A stretch of 64,000 nucleotides of DNA from Obrimoposthia wandeli (GCA_977020255.1 CDROCS010002735.1:124001-188000), one strand, 5' to 3'; numbered from the stretch's first letter, positions 13,450 to 52,103 are shown. The notes: a model not told the origin generated them from the sequence alone. Translations and numbers: made by a program.

Positions 13450-13795
13450 GCAGTTTCGCTGCAGCGAGTTCATTTCTTTTTACGAAAAGCTACCGCGTCC
13501 TGCTCACGCCCCTTACCTACAAAAGAAACAGAACCAAAGCGCTCTTTTCCATTGCCTGCAAGCTGCTTCATGCCGAAACCTGTCGTGTAGCTTTGGCGAC
13601 AATACAAGGGAACTGGTAGGCTTTGCACATTGCTGTCCGGTTAAAAAATGTAAGTTCTCTAACTCATTGATTTGAGGTTTTCTATCATGATGAAATAGAT
13701 ATCTTCTAGCTAAATAGTATTTTTCGTTAACGTAAAATCAATAAGTTATAGATCAACAAAAATTAAACCGGACTCTAATGGGCTTTGTAGCTTAC
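13450..13795 (-). repeat. Dispersed repeat R, copy 1, interrupted by a MITE
   Basis: Reverse complement matches both ends of the 23753-23988 element: ..AAAAGAAATGAACTCG..CGAAACTGC and TAAGCTACAAAGCC..CCCTTGTATTGTCGCC. Confidence 0.7.
13628..13780. mobile_element. MITE family A, copy 1 (153 bp)
   Basis: TIRs cattgctgtccggtt / aaccggactctaatg. 9-bp target duplication ggctttgca / ggctttgta. Homologous to 15504-15654 and 51952-52103. Confidence 0.85.
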
Positions 13796-15503: not shown

Positions 15504-15654
15504 CATTGCTGTCCGGTTAAAAAGTGTAAGCTCTCTAACCCATTGATTTGTGGTTTTCTAGCATAGATAGTTGGATTTTTTAGCCAAATAATACTTGTGG
15601 TTAGCGTGAAATCAATGAGTTACAGAACAACAAAAATTAAACCGGACACTAATG
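15504..15654. mobile_element. MITE family A, copy 2 (151 bp)
   Basis: TIRs cattgctgtccggtt / aaccggacactaatg. Degenerate 9-bp flanks gcctattaa / tcctatgga. Confidence 0.82.
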
Positions 15655-19708: not shown

Positions 19709-22700
19709 TTATTCTAATACGGTGACAAATTCACCAACGACTCGCATATTTTCACAATCATCTTCATGAAGGACAATATCTTTAAATACTGGGTCAGTGG
19801 AATTGGGCTTAAGTAAAATAACAGAATGCTGCCACTCACCATCATCAGAGGCTATTTTTCACTAGCATATGTTTTAACCGTAAATGATGAATTATAATCT
19901 TCATCATTTTTTCCATAATTTTCAACAAGTACAATTTTACCGTTTCGTGAACCACCACGAGATTCTTTAAATAGACAAACAGAGTTATTCCCAATTCTAC
20001 GGTTCATCGACTCCCCAATAACCCTACAAGCAAAGTACCTTTGCTCTCCTGAGTACTGAATAGGTACTTTAATCATATTGTAATCTTTGTTTTCTTGCAT
20101 TTCACTAAATGACCCTGCTGCTGCATAAAAGTCATAAAATGGAATAAGGCTCTCTTCTTTATCATCAACTAGAAAGAGGGGTGCGAACTCTACAGGAACA
20201 GGAACACTCTCTACTTCGACTACTTCTTTCTTTCGTAGATACTGATACATTTCGTCCGAAACTGGTGTACAAAGGCTGAAAATAAATCTGACTACTGATA
20301 TTTTTTTACCGTTGCCTGAATTCAATGATGTTTGTTCAACTTTATCTTTTTCTGGTTCAACATCACCCATATAGTAAAATTCAATGCCTTCATCGTTACT
20401 TTTCTTGATAAACAATGGAAGTCTAATATCACCTCTATTACCTAGTATGGATTGAACATCATTACTTTCTAATTTTCGATTAGATTTTGACATCCATGAA
20501 AATTCTTTGTTATTAACAAATTCATCTTCATATTTAGTTGATTCAGAAATATCTTCATCTTTATGGTAGTTAACGAATATGGGACAATGTGTGCTGTTAG
20601 GGCTAACTAGATAACCACCTACATTTTGAGCCACTGGATTTATTTCTACATTTAAGATTCTAAAAACATCTTTCCTTGAATACTTTTCGTACAAACAAAA
20701 ACCATCACGCCAGTTTTCACTTTCATAGAGGTCATTAAATTTATGAATCGAATAGTTAATAGAGTCTTGTAAATATCGTTCAAACAAATCGTGTTCAAGT
20801 AATGCTTTGAATTCTGCCGTTAACTGAAAAACACCGTCATCAAGTGTTAAAATATTTAATCCATAAATTTCATTAAGCGTGAGTAATTTCCCCAAGCTCT
20901 TTTCACGAATGAATTTAAAGTTAAGGTTATTTAGACACGATTCTACTGTTTCATCTGATACTTCATAATCATATTTATCAAATACAGTAGTTTTTAATTG
21001 TAAAACTGTACAAACGCCTTCCTGCAGTAACTCATTGAGAATTATGCTTTCTTCAACTCTTTTACCGTTATTCAGTTCATTGGAAAAGAACTCAAGCAAT
21101 TTTACAGATTTTTCTGAAAGTGCATGTGTAAAACCTTTTTCAACCTTACATACAAAATTGAAAAATGATTTTGAATAGCCTATGTACAAAAATGGATCTC
21201 GTGAACCATATTCGATAAAATCCATCATCAAAGGTATACGTCCAAGCTTATATTTTAAAAGAAAATAATCCTTTTTTAAATCGGTAAGCATTTTCATATT
21301 TGCAGAATCAATTGATGCAAAAATTCGTTCTTTAGTAATGGCATCAAAATTGATGGTGGAACTTCCGGGGATAAGTCTACTACCGCTTGATATTGATCTA
21401 CGCAAAGCATCTTTGTTATATGAAGTGTCGCCATAAAGAGCAATGGGTATGAGGTAATTATTACTATAATTACCAATGAAATCGATAACTGTAAGGTACC
21501 CCTTACCATCTACTTTTCGCAACCCACGCCCCAGCTGTTGTACAAAAATTATGGCCGAATCTGTAGGTCGAATCATAATAATTTGATTCACTTTCGGAAT
21601 ATCAATTCCTTCATTAAAAATGTCAACGGTGAAAATATAATCCAACTTTTCGGCTAAATTATCCGACTCCAACAGATCAATTGCATTGCTTCTTTCATCT
21701 TCCGAATTTTCTCCCGTGAGAGCTAAAGAACGAAAACCACACTTATTAAACAATATTGCTAGCTTCTTCGATTCTTCATTTCGAGAACAAAAAACTAGAC
21801 CACGTGTAATACCGTTATCAGTACCATAAAAGCTAGCATGCTTAATTATATTATCGACTCTGTCTTGTGACGGAAGAGATGCAAAGTCTCTTGTGTTTTC
21901 TTGTACAACATCATCAATTATCAGATCAGCAACTCCATAATAATGAAAGTCACTCAGCATCCCTTCTTCCATAGCTCTATTTAAACGAATCTCATAAGCA
22001 ATGTTATGGTCAAACAGACTAAAGATATCTTCACCATCCGTTCTTTCTGGCGTTGCTGTCATTCCCAATAAAAAGCGAGGTTTAAAATGATAAAGAAGTC
22101 GTTTATATGAATCTGCACCCGAGCGATGCGACTCATCAATTACGATATAGTCAAAACAGTCTTTATTGAATTGATCCAAATGATTTTGTTTTGAAATGGT
22201 TTGCACGGTAGCAAATAGAAAATCTTTATCAAGCTCTTGTTGAGAGCCAGAATATACTCCCATTGTTTTATCCGCTCCAAAAATATCTTGGAATGCTTCC
22301 AATGATTTTAGTGCAATTGTTCGTCTATGCACGACAAACAATAATCGTTTTGGTTTAAAGTTCCGTGCATCAAAAGCAGACAAATAGGTTTTACCAGTAC
22401 CTGTTGCAGATATCAGTAGAGCTTTTGTAGCACCTCGTTTTCTTAAAATCTTAATATTCTCTAGTGCTTCTACCTGCATAGAATTTGGCGATATTTCAGG
22501 TTTAATTAATATTTTTTCGTGTGCTTTAGATAGCAACTTTTGTTTATTATAAATATCTTCATAAGTGTCAATAAACGGTGCAGTAACAGGTGTAGCACTT
22601 TGAAAATCCGAATAAAATTCCTCTGTGATTTTTTCAACAATGCTACTGGTATGAAGCGCTGAAACTTTAAGGTTCCACTCTTTATTTGTAGTTAGCGCCG

Positions 22701-23127
22701 CGGACGTCAGGTTACTACTACCTATAATGAGATTATGATATTCCTCTTTTTTAAACAAATATCCTTTTGAATGGGAGTCTTCATTGGTGGCAATACGCAG
22801 TTCAATATTAGTGAATTTCAGAAGTTTTCTAAGCGCTTCAGGTTGCGTAAAGTTTAAGTACTGTGAAACAACAACTTTTCCTTTAACACCTTTTTCTTCA
22901 AGGTCTTTGAGGGTATTCATTAAAGTTGCAACACCATTTGTTGTCACAAATGCCACTGAAATATAGAATTCTTTACAATACCGTAGCTCTTCTAAAATTG
23001 TACAGAGCACTTTTTGAGGCGGGTTCTTTTTGTTAACCAATAACGTCGGTTGATACAACTTTTCAGAAATTGATTCTTTATCAATAAAACCAGTTTTTAA
23101 ACTTTTACTCAATTCATCTAATATCAT
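19709..23127 (-). CDS. SauUSI-like type IV (modification-dependent) restriction enzyme: PLD nuclease, SF2 helicase, DUF3427 and S24-like tail (frameshift at about 19855)
   Basis: HSKGY..IGSSNLT (PLD), ATGTGKT, DESHR, QQLGRGLR, YSRKDV..LN/PIFVNYHK (DUF3427-like), FYAAAGSF/V.GESMN/FTVKTY (S24-like). The track ORF ends at 19852; a shifted frame adds 48 aa and ends at 19709. Confidence 0.8.
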
Positions 23128-23141
23128 GTGATATGGAGTTC

Positions 23142-23540
23142 TTATATATGGTCTATTTCGAGTTTTTTGACTATTGGAATATCAGCTGCAGCCCAATCAA
23201 GTTGATGCAACTCATCGATTTGTAACCACTTGTGATCAATGTGTTCAGTCAGTGTTATATCCTTGTGCTCAACTGGACAAATGAAAGAGTGCATCGTAAT
23301 GTAAAAGTCTGGATATTGATGATTAACGGTATTGAAAAATTTGGGCTCAATAATATCTAAGTGCAATTCTTCTTTAATCTCTCTAATTATTGCAGATTCT
23401 TTTGTCTCACCTGTTTCAATTTTACCACCAGGGAATTCATATTTTTTTGAAATGTAATCAAGCTTTGCTGGCCCACGTTGAACGCAAAGGATTTGCTCAC
23501 CATTTCGTATAATTGCAGCAACTACTTCTATTTTTTTCAA
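23142..23540 (-). CDS. MutT/Nudix (deoxy)nucleoside triphosphate pyrophosphohydrolase
   Basis: Nudix box EFPGGKIETGETKESAIIREIKEEL. TTG start at 23540 with TAAGGA RBS. Stop is 14 nt before the restriction gene. Confidence 0.9.
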   Translation of the reverse strand: MKKIEVVAAIIRNGEQILCVQRGPAKLDYISKKYEFPGGKIETGETKESAIIREIKEELHLDIIEPKFFNTVNHQYPDFYITMHSFICPVEHKDITLTEHIDHKWLQIDELHQLDWAAADIPIVKKLEIDHI

Positions 23541-23752
23541 GAATTTACGATCCTTATAATATGTTATGACAATTAGGTACAAAGTAAATTGATTTAATAC
23601 AAACAAGTAATGTTTTTAACTTATTGAAACCCATAATATTTCACTTCAACAACCAGCTCAATCAAAAAGAACATAGAACAGCCATATTTAAAGCCTCTAG
23701 GATCCCGCATTTACTAACGATTCTTTCTACCATTCCAATGTATTCCAGAAAC

Positions 23753-24063: not shown

Positions 24064-25110
24064 CTAAACCGCCAAACCAATACTTACCTCACACTCTTGG
24101 CAGTTAAGGGTGTAACTCTCACGTTTTTTGCTCACTTTGGTTTTTTTGCTTTTACAACTAGGACACGGCTGTTTCATCGATGTATTAGTACTGCAATTAT
24201 CGCAAGCCGTGTAATAGCCATACTTCCCATAACTTGGAGTTAGCTTGGGGCCTAATCCACATTTTTTACAAGTCAATTGCAAAGCTTTTACCGCAGGCTC
24301 TGCCACTAGCGTAGGTTCTTTTTTATCTGTGGGTGCGTGCCAAACAGCGTCATTTTTTAAGACGAGTGTGTCTGCTGCCGGAACTGCTTTATCCGCTGTA
24401 ATATTGATGCTTTTAGGGGAATCTAGTTTGGGTGTGATTTTTTTGATGGATTGTTCTACAACGCCCTGAGATAAAATAAATTGACTGATACCTGCCATTT
24501 CTGATGGAGTAAATTTAGGCCGAGAATCAAGTATATTAATAACACTCAATACTGCATTTCTTAATTTCATTATCGAATTTAGTTTTTCAACCAAGAATTC
24601 AGACTTAACCAACTGCTTAGAAACTTTGCTGGGCATGCTATCACGATCAATAATTGCATTACTTGAGACCGCACATACATTATCCCAACAACGGCCACCA
24701 AAACCTTCCTGCCTCAAGCCTAAGACTTTCCCTAACATCTCTGCTTTGTTCTCAAAGAGCATTTCTCTAAATAGTCGCTGTTGTAGCTCAACTTGCTTTA
24801 TAGGAGAAGGCATACCCTGCCACTTATCGTTATAACTACGTGTCCATTCTTCCTGAGCATTGACCTTCACTTCTCCAGTAATACTTTTAGACTCGATCAA
24901 AACAAAACCATAAGGATAAAACACCAAGTGATCTATCTGTGCTGTCTCTTGGTTATAACTAAACTTTAGGTCGTTAAATACAAATACTTGTTCATGATCT
25001 TTAAAGGCTCGACGTAAATAAAAAGCCACATCAAGCTCTTGCTTAACTCCAGCTTTTGCTTGAGCAGTATTAACCGCTTTAGTTACTTTATCTTTTAGAA
25101 TCAAAATCAA
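24064..25110 (-). CDS. NERD-domain nuclease with C-terminal Zn ribbons
   Basis: AG..QE..VA.YL, VFNDL, AQIDHLV..PYG..LIESKS, SP..QV. C-terminal CKKC/CDNC/CPSC/CQEC. Confidence 0.88.
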   Translation of the reverse strand: MILILKDKVTKAVNTAQAKAGVKQELDVAFYLRRAFKDHEQVFVFNDLKFSYNQETAQIDHLVFYPYGFVLIESKSITGEVKVNAQEEWTRSYNDKWQGMPSPIKQVELQQRLFREMLFENKAEMLGKVLGLRQEGFGGRCWDNVCAVSSNAIIDRDSMPSKVSKQLVKSEFLVEKLNSIMKLRNAVLSVINILDSRPKFTPSEMAGISQFILSQGVVEQSIKKITPKLDSPKSINITADKAVPAADTLVLKNDAVWHAPTDKKEPTLVAEPAVKALQLTCKKCGLGPKLTPSYGKYGYYTACDNCSTNTSMKQPCPSCKSKKTKVSKKRESYTLNCQECEVSIGLAV

Positions 25111-25224
25111 AATCCATTTAATACAATCTCTATTCTGGGTGTATAAACTATGAAAAAAGAGACTGCCTATTTATATTCTATTGCGTCATTCAAATTATTT
25201 GGCTTACAGATCGCAACTCATTTT

Positions 25225-25395
25225 TCAGTCATTCTTATTAATCATTATCTCAATAGATTTACTGCTACCTGCATACCACTTTTGAACATACAAAGAGCCT
25301 ATGATTGGAGCGGTTCCTTCATCAGGGACTTCCTTATAGCGGACACTGTTTTTTGTTTCTTTCTCGTATTCAAACTTTACTACTTTCTTAGACAT
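25225..25395 (-). CDS. Unannotated 56-aa microprotein, copy 1
   Basis: AGGA RBS, then MSKKVVKFEYEKETKNSVRYKEVPDEGTAPIIGSLYVQKWYAGSSKSIEIMINKND*. The paralog at 42840-43010 differs at about 12 synonymous sites and 1 nonsynonymous codon. Confidence 0.85.
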   Translation of the reverse strand: MSKKVVKFEYEKETKNSVRYKEVPDEGTAPIIGSLYVQKWYAGSSKSIEIMINKND

Positions 25396-25453
25396 AAGGT
25401 TTTCCTGATAAACTAATATCTGACTACATTCATCGCTTCCCAGCTATAAACTA

Positions 25454-25804
25454 TTAATCATATTGGTCATACTTTTTAGCACTGCCCCTTACTTTATCCG
25501 CTGGATATTTAGCGGCGTTTTTCAACATTTTTTGCTCAACGGCCTCTAAAATATTCACATCCAATTGGGTGGCTAAACGTAGTAGATAGATTTGTACATC
25601 GGCGATTTCATCAACCACTGCTGATAACTGTTCAGGGGATAAATTTTGCGATTGTGCCTCAGTGAGCCATTGAAAACATTCTACTAATTCAGACGCTTCA
25701 ACACTTAATGCCATAGAGAGGTTTTTAGGTGAATGGAATTGATCCCAATCACGATCATCAGCAAACTTTTTAAGCTTTACTTTTAAAGCGTCTAATTCAT
25801 CCAT
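25454..25804 (-). CDS. MazG-like nucleotide pyrophosphohydrolase
   Basis: F..DRDWDQFHSPKNL.MALSVEASEL.E.FQW, DEIADV.IYL, KM.KNA.KYP. Confidence 0.9.
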   Translation of the reverse strand: MDELDALKVKLKKFADDRDWDQFHSPKNLSMALSVEASELVECFQWLTEAQSQNLSPEQLSAVVDEIADVQIYLLRLATQLDVNILEAVEQKMLKNAAKYPADKVRGSAKKYDQYD

Positions 25805-30624: not shown

Positions 30625-30742
30625 ATTATCGCGTACGCATAAATATAATCGAATACCCCCTTTAAATATCATTATTTATACGATCGCATAAAATTTGCAT
30701 GTTTCACCAAAAACCATGTTAAACTTTATGCATACGCATAAA
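30625..30742. promoter_or_regulatory. Three palindromic operators upstream of hipB (consensus TTTATGCG-N2-CGCATAAA)
   Basis: attatcgcgtacgcataaat (30625-44), tttatacgatcgcataaa (30675-92), tttatgcatacgcataaa (30725-42). Confidence 0.75.
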
Positions 30743-30753
30743 AGGCTATCAAG

Positions 30754-31011
30754 ATGAAAATAACCATTCACGATACTAAACAATTAGGGGCTATTGCTAA
30801 ACACGTTAGACAAGGCCAATCTCTGGATCAAGAAACAGCAGGTTTACTTTCTGGTAATGGTTTGACCTTTATTAGTCAATTTGAAAACGGCAAAGAGTCC
30901 GTTGAAATAGCCAGAGTTTTTAACTTGTTAGCGCAGCTAGGTATTGAATTAGAAATAAAATTGCCTCCCAACCTTAATAGTAAGACGCTGAATAAGATTG
31001 AAAACATATAA
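30754..31011 (+). CDS. hipB: HipB-like HTH_XRE antitoxin
   Basis: LG...R..Q.L.Q...G.....FISQFENGKESVEI..V..LL..LGI, directly upstream of hipA. Confidence 0.85.
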   Translation: MKITIHDTKQLGAIAKHVRQGQSLDQETAGLLSGNGLTFISQFENGKESVEIARVFNLLAQLGIELEIKLPPNLNSKTLNKIENI

Positions 31012-31037
31012 ACTTTACGCTATTGCGGATCAAATAA

Positions 31038-32297
31038 ATGCGCCAACTTAACGTTTACATTAATCAAGACCCTATCGGTTGTTTGAGAGAGGAGAATGAC
31101 ATTTGGTCTTTTCAATACTCTTCGTTTTGGCTTTTTCATCCACAGAATTACCCTTTATCTCCTCACATTCCTTTACAGGAAAGCGCTTTAATAGATGGAT
31201 CTACCCATCGGCACATACAATGGTTTTTTGATAACCTGTTACCAGAAGAAGGCGCTAGAACCCTTTTAGCAAAAGATATTAATATTAACTCAGCGGATTC
31301 GTTTGGTATTTTAAATATTACAGGCTCAGAATCTGCAGGCGCTATAACCTTAGTCGCAAATAAACCGACAGACGACGGCTCAGTTAGTGAGTTAACGGCA
31401 CAGGAACTTAATACGCGTATCGATAACTTACCGAACCTGCCTCTTAACAACACAAAAAGTAAGCGAATGTCGATTGCTGGCGCACAACACAAGATGCTGA
31501 TCGTGATGTATAAGGGTGTCATATACGAACCTAACGGTGCTATGCCCTCAACCCATATTTTAAAGCCACTACACACACAACCTGATATGTATTGGCAGAG
31601 TGTTAGAAATGAATGGTTCGTAATGAGTCTTGCACGCGCTATAGGGTTAGATATCCCAGAGGTGCAAGTGCATTACTTTCCTAATACCACTTACATCATT
31701 GAGCGCTTTGATAGAAAAGGTAGCTACCCTAATCAGTCAAGGCTGCACGCATTGGATGGCTGTCAGTTATTAGGTTTAAGTAAATCGGCAAAATACAGTC
31801 AAAGCACGGTTGCACAGTTAAAAAGCTTTGCTGAAAAAATAACAGCAAAGGGCCAGGCAAAAATAACCATTTTCCGCTGGGTCATTTTTAATGCATTAGT
31901 TGGTAATACTGATGCTCACCTTAAAAATTTAAGCTGCCTATTCAATGAAAACGGGTTAGTGCTCTCACCCATGTACGACCTTTTAAGCACTGCAATCTAC
32001 GAAAAAGCAGGCCAACACTTAAATGCTGAACTATCACAACCCATCGGCAACGCTATCACTTTAGCAGAATTAACCACGGATAATATATTCGAGTTTGCTG
32101 ATGAATTTGGTTTAAATAGAAAAATTGCACGACGTATCTTAGATAGCTTGTTGAATAACATTGAAACCGAAGCTGATAACTTAATTCGCGTTGTAGAAGA
32201 AGTAAAAAATATCCCTTATAAACTAGCTGAACTAAGGATGCTACGTGAGGTACGCTACAATCTAATCGCTGAAATGGTGGCCAAGCTTAAGAGATAA
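31038..32297 (+). CDS. hipA: HipA family Ser/Thr kinase toxin
   Basis: HipA N-terminal coupling domain (WFFDNLLPEE.AR), SIAGAQHK, THILKP, IERFDR, GNTDAHLKN, LSPMYDLL. Confidence 0.92.
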   Translation: MRQLNVYINQDPIGCLREENDIWSFQYSSFWLFHPQNYPLSPHIPLQESALIDGSTHRHIQWFFDNLLPEEGARTLLAKDININSADSFGILNITGSESAGAITLVANKPTDDGSVSELTAQELNTRIDNLPNLPLNNTKSKRMSIAGAQHKMLIVMYKGVIYEPNGAMPSTHILKPLHTQPDMYWQSVRNEWFVMSLARAIGLDIPEVQVHYFPNTTYIIERFDRKGSYPNQSRLHALDGCQLLGLSKSAKYSQSTVAQLKSFAEKITAKGQAKITIFRWVIFNALVGNTDAHLKNLSCLFNENGLVLSPMYDLLSTAIYEKAGQHLNAELSQPIGNAITLAELTTDNIFEFADEFGLNRKIARRILDSLLNNIETEADNLIRVVEEVKNIPYKLAELRMLREVRYNLIAEMVAKLKR

Positions 32298-42704: not shown

Positions 42705-42735
<31 letters not shown>

Positions 42736-42739
42736 GATG
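42705..42739. repeat. Heptamer tandem repeat (AATGATG) x5
   Basis: Read directly from the sequence, between the tenA start and the microprotein cassette. Confidence 0.9.
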
Positions 42740-42839
42740 AGAAAAGAGACAGCCTATATATATCATTGCGACATGCTAGTCATTTAACTAGCAAACCGGA
42801 AATCGCAATTCGCGACTCATTTTTCAATCACTATTATTT

Positions 42840-43010
42840 TTAATCATTCTTATTAATAGTTATTTCAATAGATTTACTGCTACCCGCATACCACTTCTGC
42901 ACATATAAAGAACCTATGATTGGAGCAGTTCCCTCATCTGGGACTTCCTTATAGCGAACACTGTTTTTTGTTTCTTTCTCGTATTCAAACTTTACTACTT
43001 TTTTAGACAT
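42840..43010 (-). CDS. Unannotated 56-aa microprotein, copy 2
   Basis: AGGA RBS, then MSKKVVKFEYEKETKNSVRYKEVPDEGTAPIIGSLYVQKWYAGSSKSIEITINKND*. Confidence 0.85.
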   Translation of the reverse strand: MSKKVVKFEYEKETKNSVRYKEVPDEGTAPIIGSLYVQKWYAGSSKSIEITINKND

Positions 43011-43039
43011 AGGATATTCCTGATAAACTATTCTTGTTT

Positions 43040-43071
43040 GACTAATGACTAATGACTAATGACTAATGACT
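43040..43071. repeat. Heptamer tandem repeat (GACTAAT) x4.5
   Basis: Read directly from the sequence, in the 5' leader of microprotein copy 2. Confidence 0.9.
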
Positions 43072-43384
43072 TAACGCGTATAGAGAGATAGATTTTTACA
43101 TCATCAACAAATTACCGCAATTTAACTAATCGTTTCCCAGCTATAAATTCTTAATAGCTTTTATTACTTCATTTTTTGATTGAAGGCTTAATTAGTAGCT
43201 TTACTTTTGCACAGGTATTATTGCGGGAAACAACAATGACTCTACCCCTTAAGACTATCAAGTTAATCATTGTTTTGTAAGTTATTTAAATTTATTTCAT
43301 CCCAGTATTACGACACAACAACAGCGGTATAGTTTTAAGTATGTTCATTGAAAATACTATATTTGGTTACAGCCCTATTGCACT

Positions 43385-43610
43385 TTGGATCGAAATAGCA
43401 AGAGTGTTTAACTTAGTAGCTCAGCTAGGTATTGAAATTATGCTGCCACCCTACCTGACCGATAAGGTGATTGATAAGATTAGACATATATTAATTTCAC
43501 AGTACTTTTGGGTAGGACAAATACGGCAATTTACCCCTCACATTAATCAAGATAAAACAGGCTACTTGAGAGAATAGGATGAGATTTGGTCTTTTGAAGA
43601 CTCACTTTTC
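43385..43610 (+). pseudogene. Decayed duplicate of the hipB 3' end and hipA 5' end
   Basis: IEIARVFNLVAQLGIEI matches HipB VEIARVFNLLAQLGIEL. IRQFTPHINQDKTGYLRE*DEIWSF matches HipA MRQLNVYINQDPIGCLREENDIWSF. Confidence 0.82.
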
Positions 43611-45010
43611 TATTTATTAACCACAGGTGTTTTTAAATCTAACCTATTAATAATATAAAAACAGCAAATTAGCGAAGCAACTCCAAAAACCACATTACCG
43701 ATAGCGTTACCCATGAATACACCGTCAACCCCTAAGTAATGGACGCCTATGAGTACAAAAGGCACAGTGCCAACACTCGCTTTTGCAAAATTGAATAATG
43801 TCGATATAAACGGATAACCCAAATTATTAAACGCGGCATTTGCTACGAACAAAAAGCCATAAAAGGCAAAAGCAGGTCCTATCCAAATACTGACAAAACG
43901 CATAAAATGTGCAGCATCTCCGCTAGTGTTGAACCACAGTATCAGTGTTTCAATACTCAAATAAAACATCAGAGCTGCCACCGTACAATAACTTGTCACA
44001 AAAATACAACTATCTGATAAGGTACGTTTTACCCGAGAAAAATTTTGCGCACCAAAATTTTGCGCATAAATAGGCCCCACGGCTGAAGACAACGCAAAAA
44101 TCACACCGAACACCACCGGCGTCATTCTCCCTGTTAAAGTCCAACCCGCCATATAACTTTCACCAAACTTAGCAATTTCATAAGTCATATATGCATTTGC
44201 AGAAGGTGTAGCGAGCTGAGTCGCTATTGTCGGAACCCCTATCGCAATTATTAACTTTACATTGTTCAAAAATCCGGACATTTCAAAGTCCGTAAAGAAA
44301 TCGTGTTTGGCATAAATAAAATAAAGCGCTGTGACAGCCACCGCAATACGCGCAAAAACCGAGGCCAGTGCAGCGCCTTCTATACCCATTTCTAAAACAA
44401 ATATAAATAGAGGATCTAACAGGACGTTAACCAAAGACCCACTGAGCATCGCCAACATTGATAACTTAGGTGCGCCCATCGCTCGTAATAGAGCGCCGCC
44501 TGACATAGCAACCGCTAAAAAAGGCAAGCTTGGTAAAATAATTGCTAAATATTGATCTGCATATATAAACGCATCTTGCTGTGCGCCTATTAATAAAAGT
44601 AGATCTTTCCTAAATACCCAAGTAATTGCTGCAACGACGGTTGTAAATAGGATACTAAATGCAAAGTTACTCAGTGCAAGAGACCTCGCTCGTAAGTCTT
44701 CTCTTGCACCTATCGCCTTGGCAACGGTCGCAGACATTGAAATAGAAAGTCCGATAGAAAAGCTCATGTTAAAGAACATGATACTGGCAGCAAACCCTAA
44801 GCCTGCCACGATACTTTGATTATTGAGTAACGTTAGGAAGTATAAGTCTATTAAATCTACCGCAAAAAGCGAGACTAAACCAATTGATGAAGTAACCGTT
44901 AATATCGCAACATGTTTCATAATTGATCCTTGCAAGAATTTTGCAACGACCTTCTTTTTGTTCTTTTTCAGAGGATAACCACTTAATGTAACTAATTGAA
45001 GAGATGGCAT
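43610..45010 (-). CDS. MATE family efflux transporter
   Basis: About 12 TM segments, D.YF, NV.LDPLFIF, G..GAA.A, G.P. The start may be downstream of 45010. Confidence 0.9.
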   Translation of the reverse strand: MPSLQLVTLSGYPLKKNKKKVVAKFLQGSIMKHVAILTVTSSIGLVSLFAVDLIDLYFLTLLNNQSIVAGLGFAASIMFFNMSFSIGLSISMSATVAKAIGAREDLRARSLALSNFAFSILFTTVVAAITWVFRKDLLLLIGAQQDAFIYADQYLAIILPSLPFLAVAMSGGALLRAMGAPKLSMLAMLSGSLVNVLLDPLFIFVLEMGIEGAALASVFARIAVAVTALYFIYAKHDFFTDFEMSGFLNNVKLIIAIGVPTIATQLATPSANAYMTYEIAKFGESYMAGWTLTGRMTPVVFGVIFALSSAVGPIYAQNFGAQNFSRVKRTLSDSCIFVTSYCTVAALMFYLSIETLILWFNTSGDAAHFMRFVSIWIGPAFAFYGFLFVANAAFNNLGYPFISTLFNFAKASVGTVPFVLIGVHYLGVDGVFMGNAIGNVVFGVASLICCFYIINRLDLKTPVVNK

Positions 45011-51951: not shown

Positions 51952-52103
51952 CATTGCTGGCCAGTTAAAAAATGTAAGCCCTCTAACTCATTGATTTGTA
52001 TTTCCCTGTGATGGCTAAAGGGTATTCTTCAAGAAAACAATACTTTTCGTTAGCGTCAAATCAATGAGTGATAGAGCAACAATAATTAAACCGTACAGCA
52101 ATG
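51952..52103. mobile_element. MITE family A, copy 3 (152 bp)
   Basis: TIRs cattgctggccagtt / aaccgtacagcaatg. Flanks attatcatt / aatattatt (7 of 9 identical). Confidence 0.82.

What the first reader, a model, noticed from the sequence alone, without database searches (positions are those of the whole stretch)
25151..25456. Hidden 56-aa microprotein duplicated with its flanks and under purifying selection (second copy 42741-43155)
Seen: the ORF track shows only the antisense 88-aa shadow. The minus strand encodes MSKKVVKFEYEKETKNSVRYKEVPDEGTAPIIGSLYVQKWYAGSSKSIEI(M/T)INKND with an AGGA RBS in both copies. By my count the copies differ at about 12 synonymous third positions, a TGA/TAA stop swap and one amino acid. 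Non-coding flanks are also conserved (upstream TTTATAGCTGGGAA; downstream AAAAATGAGT.GCG and ATAGGC.GTCTCTTTT). Copy 1 lies between MazG-like and NERD genes; copy 2 lies before tenA and beside a decayed hipBA. Inference: a small beta-rich (possibly AbrB/MazE swapped-hairpin-like) protein moving as a self-contained promoter-ORF cassette in defence contexts, and a candidate for an undescribed regulator, antitoxin or defence accessory.
Basis: partly seen in the sequence, partly recalled or inferred. Interest (0 to 1): 0.8.

Follow-up and report, generated by a model that had tools for sequence, protein, structure and literature searches.

The report
Conserved 56-residue orphan protein, two copies
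The two small reading frames are real copies of a strongly conserved 56-residue gene; it belongs to a large, undescribed family found patchily in marine bacteria and some phages, probably forms a dimer, and has no known function.

Summary
Minus-strand ORFs at 25225-25395 and 42840-43010 encode the same 56-aa protein. They differ by 12 synonymous changes, one M/T change and a stop swap (dN/dS about 0.02, dS about 0.55), so they are old in-genome paralogues.

The family is large: over 1,000 clusters at 90% identity, 431 hits in species genomes, and 1,089 clusters at 50% identity by profile search. Every source calls it "hypothetical" or "orphan". Nothing matched in Pfam, NCBIfam, PHROGs, PADLOC, PDB sequences or the papers searched.

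It stays 80-90% identical across gammaproteobacterial orders. Yet it is accessory and usually single-copy: 12 of 81 Marinobacter and 5 of 101 Vibrio species searched. No neighbouring gene is shared between genera. Distant relatives lie in phage replication and early-gene regions.

AlphaFold gives four strands and a short helix (pLDDT 90.5), with only noise-level OB-like fold matches. A homodimer is supported (0.64 against a best control of 0.01), and natural tandem-domain relatives exist. Orthologue sequence appears in RNA-Seq assemblies from three studies.

The AbrB/MazE and antitoxin ideas are not supported, and the defence context is not general. My best guess, at low confidence, is a minimal OB-like dimer that binds nucleic acid or another conserved target through its invariant hairpin. 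The scan's notes record this only on this same stretch.

The parts
25225..25395 (-). Copy 1 of the 56-aa protein gene (ATG 25393-25395, stop TGA 25225-25227)
   Evidence: ORF list and translation; homologues at E down to 1e-28; dN/dS 0.02 against copy 2
42840..43010 (-). Copy 2 of the 56-aa protein gene (M51T, stop TAA)
   Evidence: sister of copy 1 in the tree, support 99/92
25403..25406 (-). AGGA ribosome-binding site of copy 1, 7 nt before the ATG
   Evidence: Read from the sequence; G-rich then A-rich consensus at -11 to -5 across 84 family genes
43018..43021 (-). AGGA ribosome-binding site of copy 2
   Evidence: Read from the sequence
25437..25450 (-). Upstream motif TTTATAGCTGGGAA of copy 1, directly after the mazG stop; possibly a -35/UP region (inferred only)
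   Evidence: Exact and unique to the two copies; also present in the C84 copy L003; no consensus promoter called
43134..43147 (-). The same upstream motif at copy 2, about 125 nt before the ATG
43040..43070 (-). (GTCATTA)x4.4 heptanucleotide repeat inserted in the leader of copy 2
   Evidence: Read from the sequence; about 1.5 units in the C84 relative
25155..25225 (-). Downstream flank of copy 1 shared with copy 2 (motifs AAAAATGAGTTGCGA and ATAGGCAGTCTCTTTT)
   Evidence: fold no better than shuffles, z = +1.1
42742..42824 (-). Downstream flank of copy 2 with the same two motifs
   Evidence: fold z = -1.5, not significant
25150..25416 (+). 88-aa antisense shadow ORF; not a gene
   Evidence: The matching frame in copy 2 has a stop and 12 amino-acid differences
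25454..25804 (-). MazG-like gene 58 nt upstream of copy 1, same strand (context)
   Evidence: PF12643, E = 2.9e-15
24064..25110 (-). NERD-domain gene 114 nt downstream of copy 1, same strand (context)
   Evidence: PF08378, E = 6.6e-19
43341..43616 (+). Decayed hipBA relic upstream of copy 2 (hipB C-terminal part and the first 32 codons of hipA)
   Evidence: tblastn against the intact hipBA at about 30.7-32.3 kb: 64% over 36 aa and 53% over 32 aa
42041..42688 (-). tenA downstream of copy 2 (context)
   Evidence: PF03070, E = 3.9e-24

Best explanation
Both loci encode a genuine 6.5-kDa, mildly basic (pI 8.9) cytoplasmic protein. It belongs to a large, so far undescribed family of accessory genes in marine Gammaproteobacteria, with distant relatives in other phyla and in phages.

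Shown or well supported:
- It is a protein-coding gene under very strong purifying selection.
- It is a stand-alone gene with no conserved partner gene.
- The two window copies are old paralogues from a segmental duplication in this lineage. Everything duplicated with the gene (the mazG end, probably hipBA) decayed; the small gene did not.
- The protein is predicted to fold as beta1-beta2-beta3-short helix-beta4 and to form a symmetric homodimer through residues 29-56.

Inferred:
- The strand order is that of an OB fold without its fifth strand.
- The dimer leaves two copies of the invariant beta1-beta2 hairpin (E11 K12 .. K15 N16 S17 . R19) exposed.
- I propose the dimer uses these hairpins to bind a highly conserved target, most likely nucleic acid (ssDNA or RNA). 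It would then act as a small chaperone-like or regulatory factor, not as part of a toxin-antitoxin pair.
For: Gene reality:
- 13 of 15 differences between the copies fall at third codon positions; dN 0.011, dS 0.55.
- Over 3,003 orthologue pairs, median pS is 0.70 and pN 0.067.
- There are more than 1,000 homologues at 79-98% identity, hits in 431 species genomes and 1,089 50%-identity clusters at E<1e-3.

Expression of relatives:
- A Vreelandella-type orthologue is held at 55-70% of sampled words in RNA-Seq contigs of three studies, including assemblies of only 1-2 Mb.
- Two brine metatranscriptome contigs cover just the ORF.

Stand-alone and accessory:
- 294 neighbour ORFs fall into 212 clusters, shared only within genera.
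- The gene is single-copy in 5 of 5 genomes tested.
- It was found in 12 of 81 Marinobacter and 5 of 101 Vibrio species.

Paralogy:
- W1 and W2 are sisters (99/92) inside an Amphritea/Nitrincolaceae clade.
- A mazG relic lies upstream of the C84 copy.

Fold and dimer:
- AlphaFold2 pLDDT is 90.5.
- The homodimer score is 0.64 against a best control of 0.01. That mark was reached by 21 of 30 proteins solved as pairs of one chain and 0 of 23 solved as single chains. The three runs agree in at least 91% of contacts, and partner pLDDT is at least 86.
- Natural two-domain relatives model as one compact unit (pLDDT 93.6, pTM 0.82).

Conserved exposed hairpin:
- E11, K12, K15, N16, S17, R19 and E22 are invariant and lie outside the predicted interface at residues 29-56.

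Nucleic-acid lean:
- The best weak fold matches are OB, S1 or KOW-type domains: EF-P domain II at TM about 0.55; S4e, NusG, RPA, telomere-end protein, RsgA.
- Phage relatives sit beside a clamp-loader-like ATPase, a DNA-repair protein, a ParB-like nuclease and an exonuclease.
Against: - No fold match rises above noise. The best Z is 4.6 for the monomer and 5.1 for the tandem form, and Foldseek E-values are 0.04 or worse.
- Net charge is only about +2 per chain.
- No binding was tested.
- The one fusion to a DNA-binding domain (KfrA_N, P0129) comes from a 911-nt contig at 1.2x coverage and is probably chimeric.
- The dimer is a model score, not a measurement.
- Expression evidence comes from contigs of relatives, not from reads of this organism. 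Such contigs cannot exclude DNA carry-over or show translation.
Confidence: 0.4

Rival explanations
1. A phage- and island-borne modulator of immunity. The dimer would sequester a defence signal (a nucleotide sponge), or bind and block or tune a defence protein. Chromosomal copies would be domesticated from phages.
For: - Relatives occur in predicted viral contigs and in arrays of small phage early genes.
- ESM Atlas clusters of about 57 aa are labelled more than 55% viral.
- BFVD fold hits include PhiJL001 Gp43 and phiAsp2 Pas48.
- Distribution is patchy and accessory.
- Copy 1 lies in a co-oriented mazG-micro-NERD-Nudix-SauUSI-like block.
- In Denitrificimonas-type genomes it borders a strain-variable region holding Gabija-like OLD+UvrD, ParE, CcdAB, BrnT, DndB and CHAT genes. 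In Alcanivorax it lies next to ParDE.
- Conserved Y36, Q38, K39 and W40 at the dimer interface could form a ligand pocket (inference).
Against: - There are no PADLOC hits for 51 diverse members.
- tblastn found nothing in 50,697 isolated phage genomes or 72,556 plasmids.
- The nearest relatives lie in stable housekeeping contexts.
- Identity of 80-90% across orders with dN/dS about 0.04 is the opposite of the fast evolution usual for arms-race proteins.
Confidence: 0.2
2. A protein-binding adaptor or stress factor of cold or saline marine bacteria. It would bind a conserved host machine such as the ribosome or RNA polymerase, or protect it under cold or salt stress.
For: - Extreme conservation fits a conserved protein target.
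- Many carriers have polar, sea-ice or brine names: Psychrobacter, Oleispira, Zhongshania antarctica, Vreelandella glaciei and arctica, Marinobacter antarcticus, Arctic surface MAGs.
- Relatives are present in a brine metatranscriptome at contig depth 44-51 and in very small RNA-Seq assemblies.
- Weak fold matches include ribosome-associated KOW and OB domains.
Against: - The habitat pattern is read from organism names only and was not tested against a background.
- The gene was not found in most species searched of the same genera, so it cannot be essential for those habitats.
- No partner is known.
Confidence: 0.15
3. An AbrB/MazE-type swapped-hairpin antitoxin or transition-state regulator, paired with MazG, NERD or HipA.
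For: - It is small, beta-rich and predicted to dimerise.
- TA genes lie nearby in this window and in some other genomes.
- There is a noise-level structural resemblance of the tandem form to CbeA/YeeU antitoxins: Z 4.4-4.9, Atlas TM 0.45.
Against: - No Pfam MazE/AbrB hit for the window protein or for 51 diverse members.
- No AbrB, MazE or SpoVT chain appears among the top 50 matches of four PDB searches.
- The short helix lies between beta3 and beta4. From memory, AbrB has it between beta2 and beta3.
- No neighbour is conserved between genera.
- The TA modules nearby already have their own antitoxins: PhD, ParD, CcdA.
Confidence: 0.04
4. An integron gene cassette, or a relic of one. This would explain the conserved flanks and the changing neighbours.
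For: In a Denitrificimonas-type contig (L102) the orthologue lies at the far end of an array. The array has an intI-like gene (PF13495) and clear attC sites such as GCCTAAC...GTTAGC. The scan's notes list integron-like arrays elsewhere in this mixed assembly.
Against: - In the L100-L107 strains the gene stays with the conserved downstream backbone while the array side varies.
- The window flanks contain no R''/R' boxes, and their folds are no better than shuffles.
- My attC scans were ad hoc and missed known sites, so this is only weak negative evidence.
- The nearest relatives lie between ordinary genes on the opposite strand.
Confidence: 0.05

Closest known systems
OB-fold nucleic-acid-binding domains (EF-P domain II, S1, RPA, RsgA N-terminal domain)
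   Same: The secondary-structure order is the same: beta1-beta2-beta3, a short helix, then beta4. The strongest conservation falls in the beta1-beta2 loop, which is a ligand-contacting loop in OB folds (from general knowledge). These domains are the recurring weak structural matches, at TM about 0.5-0.56.
   Different: There are only four strands, with no beta5. All scores are within noise (Z up to 4.6). There is no sequence similarity. A homodimer through beta4 is predicted instead of a closed five-stranded barrel.
AbrB/MazE/SpoVT swapped-hairpin dimers
   Same: About 50 residues, mostly beta, obligate dimer, and often found near TA genes.
   Different: There is no HMM or fold match. The position of the helix differs. 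There is no cognate toxin.
Uncharacterised phage proteins PhiJL001 Gp43 and phiAsp2 Pas48, and unnamed ~57-aa AlphaFold DB and ESM Atlas clusters
   Same: Same length and predicted fold: Foldseek probability 1.0, TM 0.6-0.89, identity 22-40%. These are probably the same superfamily.
   Different: They too have no known function, and they are much more divergent than the marine gammaproteobacterial subfamily.
Small dimeric beta-proteins that bind RNA or DNA (CsrA; Sso7d/Cren7-type chromatin proteins)
   Same: Size, beta-rich build and mildly basic charge. CsrA is also a beta-strand-paired homodimer (from general knowledge).
   Different: No sequence or structural hit to any of them appeared in the PDB searches. 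The likeness is an analogy of mechanism only.

Membership tests
AbrB/MazE (swapped-hairpin, Pfam MazE_antitoxin/AbrB-like) | Match to the family HMM | tested here: not met
   No Pfam family at E<=1 for either copy. None among 51 diverse members at E<=0.1.
AbrB/MazE (swapped-hairpin, Pfam MazE_antitoxin/AbrB-like) | Fold match to solved AbrB, MazE or SpoVT dimers | tested here: not met
   No such chain in the top 50 of Foldseek or VIA searches, for the monomer or the tandem model.
Type II toxin-antitoxin antitoxin | A cognate toxin gene kept next to it across genomes | tested here: not met
   294 neighbour ORFs from 78 genomes fall into 212 clusters, and none is shared across genera. Nearby TA pairs are already complete on their own.
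OB fold | Five-stranded closed beta-barrel with a helix between beta3 and beta4 | tested here: inconclusive
   The model has four strands with the helix in the OB position. Matches to OB domains reach only TM about 0.55 and Z up to 4.6.
Integron gene cassette | An attC site (R''-L''...L'-R' imperfect palindrome ending GTTRRRY) directly downstream, and the preceding cassette's attC upstream | tested here: inconclusive
   No such boxes in the window flanks, and no significant hairpin. My scans were ad hoc and missed the clear attC sites seen by eye in L102.
Known anti-phage defence or candidate defence proteins (PADLOC-DB) | Match to a PADLOC model | tested here: not met
   0 of 51 diverse members match at E<=0.01.
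Any curated protein family (Pfam-A, NCBIfam, PHROGs) | Match to a curated HMM | tested here: not met
   The only hit was phrog_36767 at E = 0.18.
Type I toxin (small peptide with antisense RNA) | A hydrophobic or membrane-active peptide and a conserved antisense promoter | tested here: not met
   The protein is hydrophilic (GRAVY -0.73) and models as a soluble beta fold. The plus-strand promoter-like hits are fewer than in shuffled sequence.

The most novel reading that the evidence does not exclude
The family is a new class of minimal (56-aa) OB-like homodimers that spread among marine bacteria and phages. They would act on immunity or nucleic-acid transactions, for example as a sponge for a defence signal or as a decoy or cap for DNA or RNA ends. 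The invariant KETKNS.R hairpin and the aromatic dimer interface would form the binding sites. The target's conservation would explain why the protein stays 80-90% identical across bacterial orders while being gained and lost like an island gene.
Probability: 0.15. Interest if true: 0.8.

Novelty: categorically new. Interest (0 to 1): 0.55.

Why it matters
Small proteins are under-annotated. This family is unusually tractable: it is abundant, very strongly conserved and confidently modelled. It occurs in cultivable bacteria such as Marinobacter, Vreelandella, Psychrobacter and Vibrio. No curated library, solved structure or paper that I could search describes it.

The combination of near-invariant sequence across orders with patchy, single-copy, accessory distribution is uncommon. 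So is survival of both paralogues while their duplicated neighbours decayed. Together these point to a specific, portable function acting on a conserved target.

Defining that function would name thousands of "orphan" genes. It might also reveal a new minimal nucleic-acid-binding or ligand-binding module. The novelty claimed here is at the level of the protein family and fold assignment. No new mechanism has been demonstrated.

Tried and rejected
- **Curated libraries.** Pfam, NCBIfam, PHROGs and PADLOC gave nothing, for the window protein or for 51 diverse members.
- **PDB sequence profiles.** Only chance hits.
- **Fold searches.** I searched the monomer and tandem models in PDB (Foldseek and VIA wide), AlphaFold DB clusters, Swiss-Prot, BFVD and the ESM Atlas. 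I found only uncharacterised look-alikes and noise-level OB, KOW or PAS-like matches.
- **Isolated phages and plasmids.** tblastn with three family members against phage genomes, and with the window protein against plasmids, found no match.
- **Flank elements.** Rfam and the promoter/terminator scans found nothing. Folding the flanks gave z between -1.5 and +1.5.
- **attC detection.** Three ad hoc scans were unreliable and missed sites visible by eye in L102. I therefore treat the negative result for the window as weak.
- **KfrA_N fusion (P0129).** Rejected as evidence for DNA binding because it comes from a 911-nt contig at 1.2x coverage.
- **Literature.** Full-text searches for ten peptide fragments returned zero papers.
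- **Horizontal transfer.** The tree shows genera scattered, but the backbone is unresolved, so I do not claim particular transfers.
- **Partner tests.** I did not test MazG, NERD or HipA as binding partners. Neighbours are not conserved, and the single complex job went to the homodimer.

Full report
**1. The observation**

The minus strand carries two 171-nt ORFs, at 25225-25395 and 42840-43010, that encode the same 56-residue protein. Each has AGGA seven bases before the ATG.

They differ at 15 nucleotides: 12 synonymous third-position changes, a two-base Met51/Thr change, and TGA against TAA. By Nei-Gojobori, dN = 0.011 and dS = 0.55, a ratio of 0.02.

Only this frame is open and conserved in both copies. 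The 88-aa antisense ORF at 25150-25416, which a 60-aa cut-off would show instead, has a stop and 12 amino-acid differences in the second copy.

Three flank motifs are exact and occur nowhere else in the 64-kb window. The upstream motif also sits beside the related copy on contig C84, and none was found in the loci from other genomes fetched by then.

About 60 nt upstream and 85 nt downstream are alignable with indels.

The stated neighbours are all confirmed:
- MazG-like and NERD beside copy 1.
- TenA downstream of copy 2.
- A hipB C-terminal and hipA N-terminal relic at 43341-43616, upstream of copy 2.

**2. What the sequence belongs to**

The assembly holding the window is 1.35 Gb in 6,912 contigs and is clearly mixed. 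The window itself is a 39.8% GC bacterial contig.

The protein has more than 1,000 homologue clusters (at 90% identity) at E<=0.01. The best 120 are 79-98% identical and nearly all exactly 56 aa. They come from Amphritea, Nitrincolaceae, Marinobacter, Halomonas/Vreelandella, Oleispira, Zhongshania, Vibrio, Psychrobacter, Cocleimonas, Alcanivorax and others.

A scan of one genome per species found 431 encoding stretches. A profile search of 1.84 billion representatives found 1,089 clusters at E<1e-3. These include members from other phyla, tandem two-domain proteins and a few fusions.

Every source names it "hypothetical" or "orphan" protein, and RefSeq WP_ accessions exist. So the gene is hidden only from a 60-aa ORF filter.

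Nothing matches in Pfam-A, NCBIfam, PHROGs or PADLOC, either for the window protein or for 51 diverse members. PDB sequence profiles gave nothing. Full-text searches for ten peptide fragments found no paper.

**3. Selection and history**

Across 3,003 orthologue pairs the synonymous sites are saturated (median pS 0.70), while pN is 0.067. The median dN/dS of the measurable pairs is 0.04.

In a maximum-likelihood tree the two window copies are sisters (99/92). They sit inside an Amphritea/Nitrincolaceae clade. They therefore arose by duplication in this lineage and were not acquired separately.

A third copy on contig C84 (98% protein identity) lies in a region 86-93% identical to the copy-2/tenA region. 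It has a mazG C-terminal relic 1.1 kb upstream. In copy 1 the shared upstream motif starts right after the mazG stop.

The simplest history is an old segmental duplication that carried the mazG end, the small gene and probably hipBA. After it, only the small gene was kept intact.

This argues against a self-contained mobile cassette in this genome. It argues strongly for selective value of the small gene.

**4. Distribution and context**

Five free-living carriers each have one copy. Only 12 of 81 Marinobacter species and 5 of 101 Vibrio species searched have it. It is therefore an accessory gene despite its conservation.

Genera are scattered in the tree, but the backbone is unresolved. Horizontal transfer is thus suggested, not shown.

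Of 294 predicted neighbour ORFs in 78 genomes, 212 are singleton or genus-restricted clusters. No partner is shared between genera.

Pfam-annotated contexts split two ways.
- Denitrificimonas-type strains: the gene marks the fixed edge of a strain-variable region. That region holds Gabija-like OLD+UvrD, PhD/ParE, CcdAB, BrnT, DndB and CHAT genes. In one contig it also holds an intI-like gene with clear attC sites.
- Alcanivorax: it follows ParDE.
- Nearest relatives of the window protein: it stands alone on its strand between a siderophore ABC transporter and a dicarboxylate symporter.
- Oleispira: it lies between a 2OG oxygenase and a zinc alcohol dehydrogenase.

In the window, copy 1 lies in a co-oriented block of mazG, the small gene, NERD, Nudix and a PLD-helicase-DUF3427 enzyme. 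DUF6088 and an intact hipBA lie upstream. Copy 2 lies between a MatE pump and a tenA/ROK catabolic cluster.

Defence context is therefore real for copy 1 and for some lineages, but it is not a property of the family.

**5. Phage relatives**

tblastn against isolated phage genomes and plasmids found nothing.

Eight IMG/VR contigs encode relatives at 36-65% identity. These lie next to a clamp-loader-like ATPase, a DNA-repair protein, a ParB-like nuclease, an exonuclease and QueC.

A 317-aa fusion protein lies in an array of small co-oriented phage-type genes.

Fold searches recover PhiJL001 Gp43, phiAsp2 Pas48 and unnamed clusters of about 57 aa that are mostly viral.

**6. Structure**

AlphaFold2 with a 22-sequence alignment gives pLDDT 90.5. 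The elements are strands 2-13, 17-22 and 34-38, a one-turn helix at 39-42, and a strand at 47-54.

No solved structure matches above noise. The recurring weak matches are OB, S1 or KOW-type domains, above all EF-P domain II at TM about 0.55. The order strand-strand-strand-helix-strand is that of an OB fold lacking its last strand. This last point is my reading, from general knowledge of the fold.

The homodimer test scored 0.64 in all three runs, against 0.01 for the best of three controls.
- That mark was reached by 21 of 30 proteins solved as pairs of one chain and by 0 of 23 solved as single chains.
- The runs agree in at least 91% of contacts, and partner pLDDT is at least 86.
- The interface spans residues 29-56, with beta4 pairing to beta4.
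- This supports dimerisation but does not show it.

Natural tandem two-domain relatives exist, and one models as a single compact unit (pLDDT 93.6, pTM 0.82). This agrees with a dimer as the working unit. The tandem model also has no solved relative above noise; its best match is Rpb8 at Z 5.1.

The invariant residues fall in two groups.
- The interface region: P30, G33, Y36, Q38, K39, W40, A42, G43, E49.
- The beta1-beta2 hairpin: E11, K12, K15, N16, S17, R19, E22. This lies outside the predicted interface, so it would be displayed twice on the dimer.

**7. Expression**

For the window stretch itself, two contigs of a brine metatranscriptome cover just the ORF. They are about 86% identical to it, at depths 44 and 51.

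For a Vreelandella orthologue, RNA-Seq assemblies from three studies hold 55-70% of the sampled words. Three of those runs assembled to only 1-2 Mb, so only well-expressed genes should appear in them.

These are contigs of relatives. They show presence in RNA libraries, not translation, and they are not from this organism.

**8. Flanks**

No sigma-70 consensus, intrinsic terminator or Rfam family is called on the gene's strand. The flank folds are no better than shuffles.

The upstream motif could be a -35/UP region: TGGGAA, then 16-17 nt, then GATATT or GGTAAT. This is my reading only.

In Oleispira a conserved TTTGCGATACTAT about 45 nt before the ATG looks like an extended -10. That is also a reading only.

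Across 84 family genes the last 20 nt before the ATG share an A/T-rich, GGGAA-type ribosome-binding-site consensus.

**9. Interpretation**

It is firm that this is a real, selected, probably expressed, stand-alone gene of an undescribed family. It is likely that the protein is a homodimer.

The antitoxin and AbrB/MazE readings fail every test I could run.

The mechanism is open. Three things point to a conserved target: near-invariance across orders, a twice-displayed invariant polar and basic hairpin, and OB-like topology. The phage replication-module context makes nucleic acid the most likely target. I put that at about 0.4, which includes the firm parts of the statement.

The rivals are:
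- an immunity-related role (signal sponge or modulator), about 0.2;
- a stress or adaptor role, about 0.15;
- an integron cassette origin, about 0.05;
- a TA or AbrB role, about 0.04.

**10. Novelty and score**

At the level of protein family and fold assignment, nothing known could be attached, so I rate it categorically new. The gene models already exist in public databases as hypothetical proteins, and no new mechanism is shown.

Interest is moderate to high (0.55). The family is abundant, tractable and oddly conserved for an accessory gene, but it has no function yet.

The scan's own notes list only this same stretch for this finding.

Noticed in passing
L102:1-4200 (ENA gut-metagenome contig, Denitrificimonas-type): An integron lies next to the orthologue. 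An intI-like gene (PF13495) is followed by co-oriented small cassettes (DUF6678, PhD/ParE, CcdAB, BrnT). The attC sites are visible by eye, for example GCCTAACAATTC...GGCGTTAGC at about 1519-1575, plus an 82-nt repeat at 1020-1101 and 2875-2956. The small gene sits at the far, strain-invariant end of the array.
   Followed up: partly
window 43040-43070 and 42705-42739: Heptanucleotide microsatellites flank copy 2. (GTCATTA)x4.4 lies in its leader, and (CATCATT)x5 lies between its flank and the tenA start. The related C84 copy has only about 1.5 GTCATTA units, so repeat number varies between the two versions. This could alter the spacing of the leader or promoter.
   Followed up: no
window 25411-25450: The stretch after the mazG stop (TAGTTTATAGCTGGGAAGCGATGAATGTAGTCAGATATTAG) resembles the gene's own ribosome-binding-site and start region (TAGTTTATCAGGAAAACCTTATGTCTAAGAAAGTAGTA). 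It may be a relic of a partial tandem duplication of the 5' end. It encodes only a 6-codon ORF.
   Followed up: no
G000 contigs C84, C6359, C5192, C253, C2815 (L003-L008): The mixed assembly holds further family members: 98% identical (C84:95157-95324), then 84%, 68%, 63% and 56%, plus a broken 47% copy with TGA and TAA inside (C84:50357-50491). The C84 region is 86-93% identical to the copy-2/tenA region. It is either a second related strain or a diverged duplicate.
   Followed up: partly
window 43341-43616 and about 30700-32297: An intact hipBA (HipA_C and Couple_hipA domains, 419 aa) lies 5.6 kb upstream of copy 1. A relic of a related hipBA (hipB C-terminus, hipA codons 1-32) lies 0.33 kb upstream of copy 2. 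This suggests the old duplication spanned hipBA as well.
   Followed up: partly
P0136, P0145, P0158, P0216 and others; P0264, P0235, P0254: Superfamily variants exist. Some are tandem two-domain proteins of 107-141 aa, partly from high-GC organisms. Others are fusions with N-terminal Cys-rich (zinc-ribbon-like) segments and low-complexity linkers. P0254 (317 aa) lies in a phage early-gene array.
   Followed up: partly
organism list: Many carriers have polar, sea-ice, deep-sea or brine names: Psychrobacter, Oleispira, Zhongshania antarctica and borealis, Vreelandella glaciei and arctica, Marinobacter antarcticus and ELB17, Arctic surface MAGs. No background test was done.
   Followed up: no
window 13657-13751, 15533-15606, 51981-52055: A dispersed repeat has the end CTCTAACTCATTGATTTG and an inverted partner ...GTTAG(C/A)G. 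It turned up in my attC-like scan.
   Followed up: no
window 19852-23606: A PLD + ResIII helicase + DUF3427 protein with a C-terminal Peptidase_S24 segment (1,091 aa) is followed by a Nudix gene. Both are co-oriented with NERD, the small gene and mazG.
   Followed up: partly
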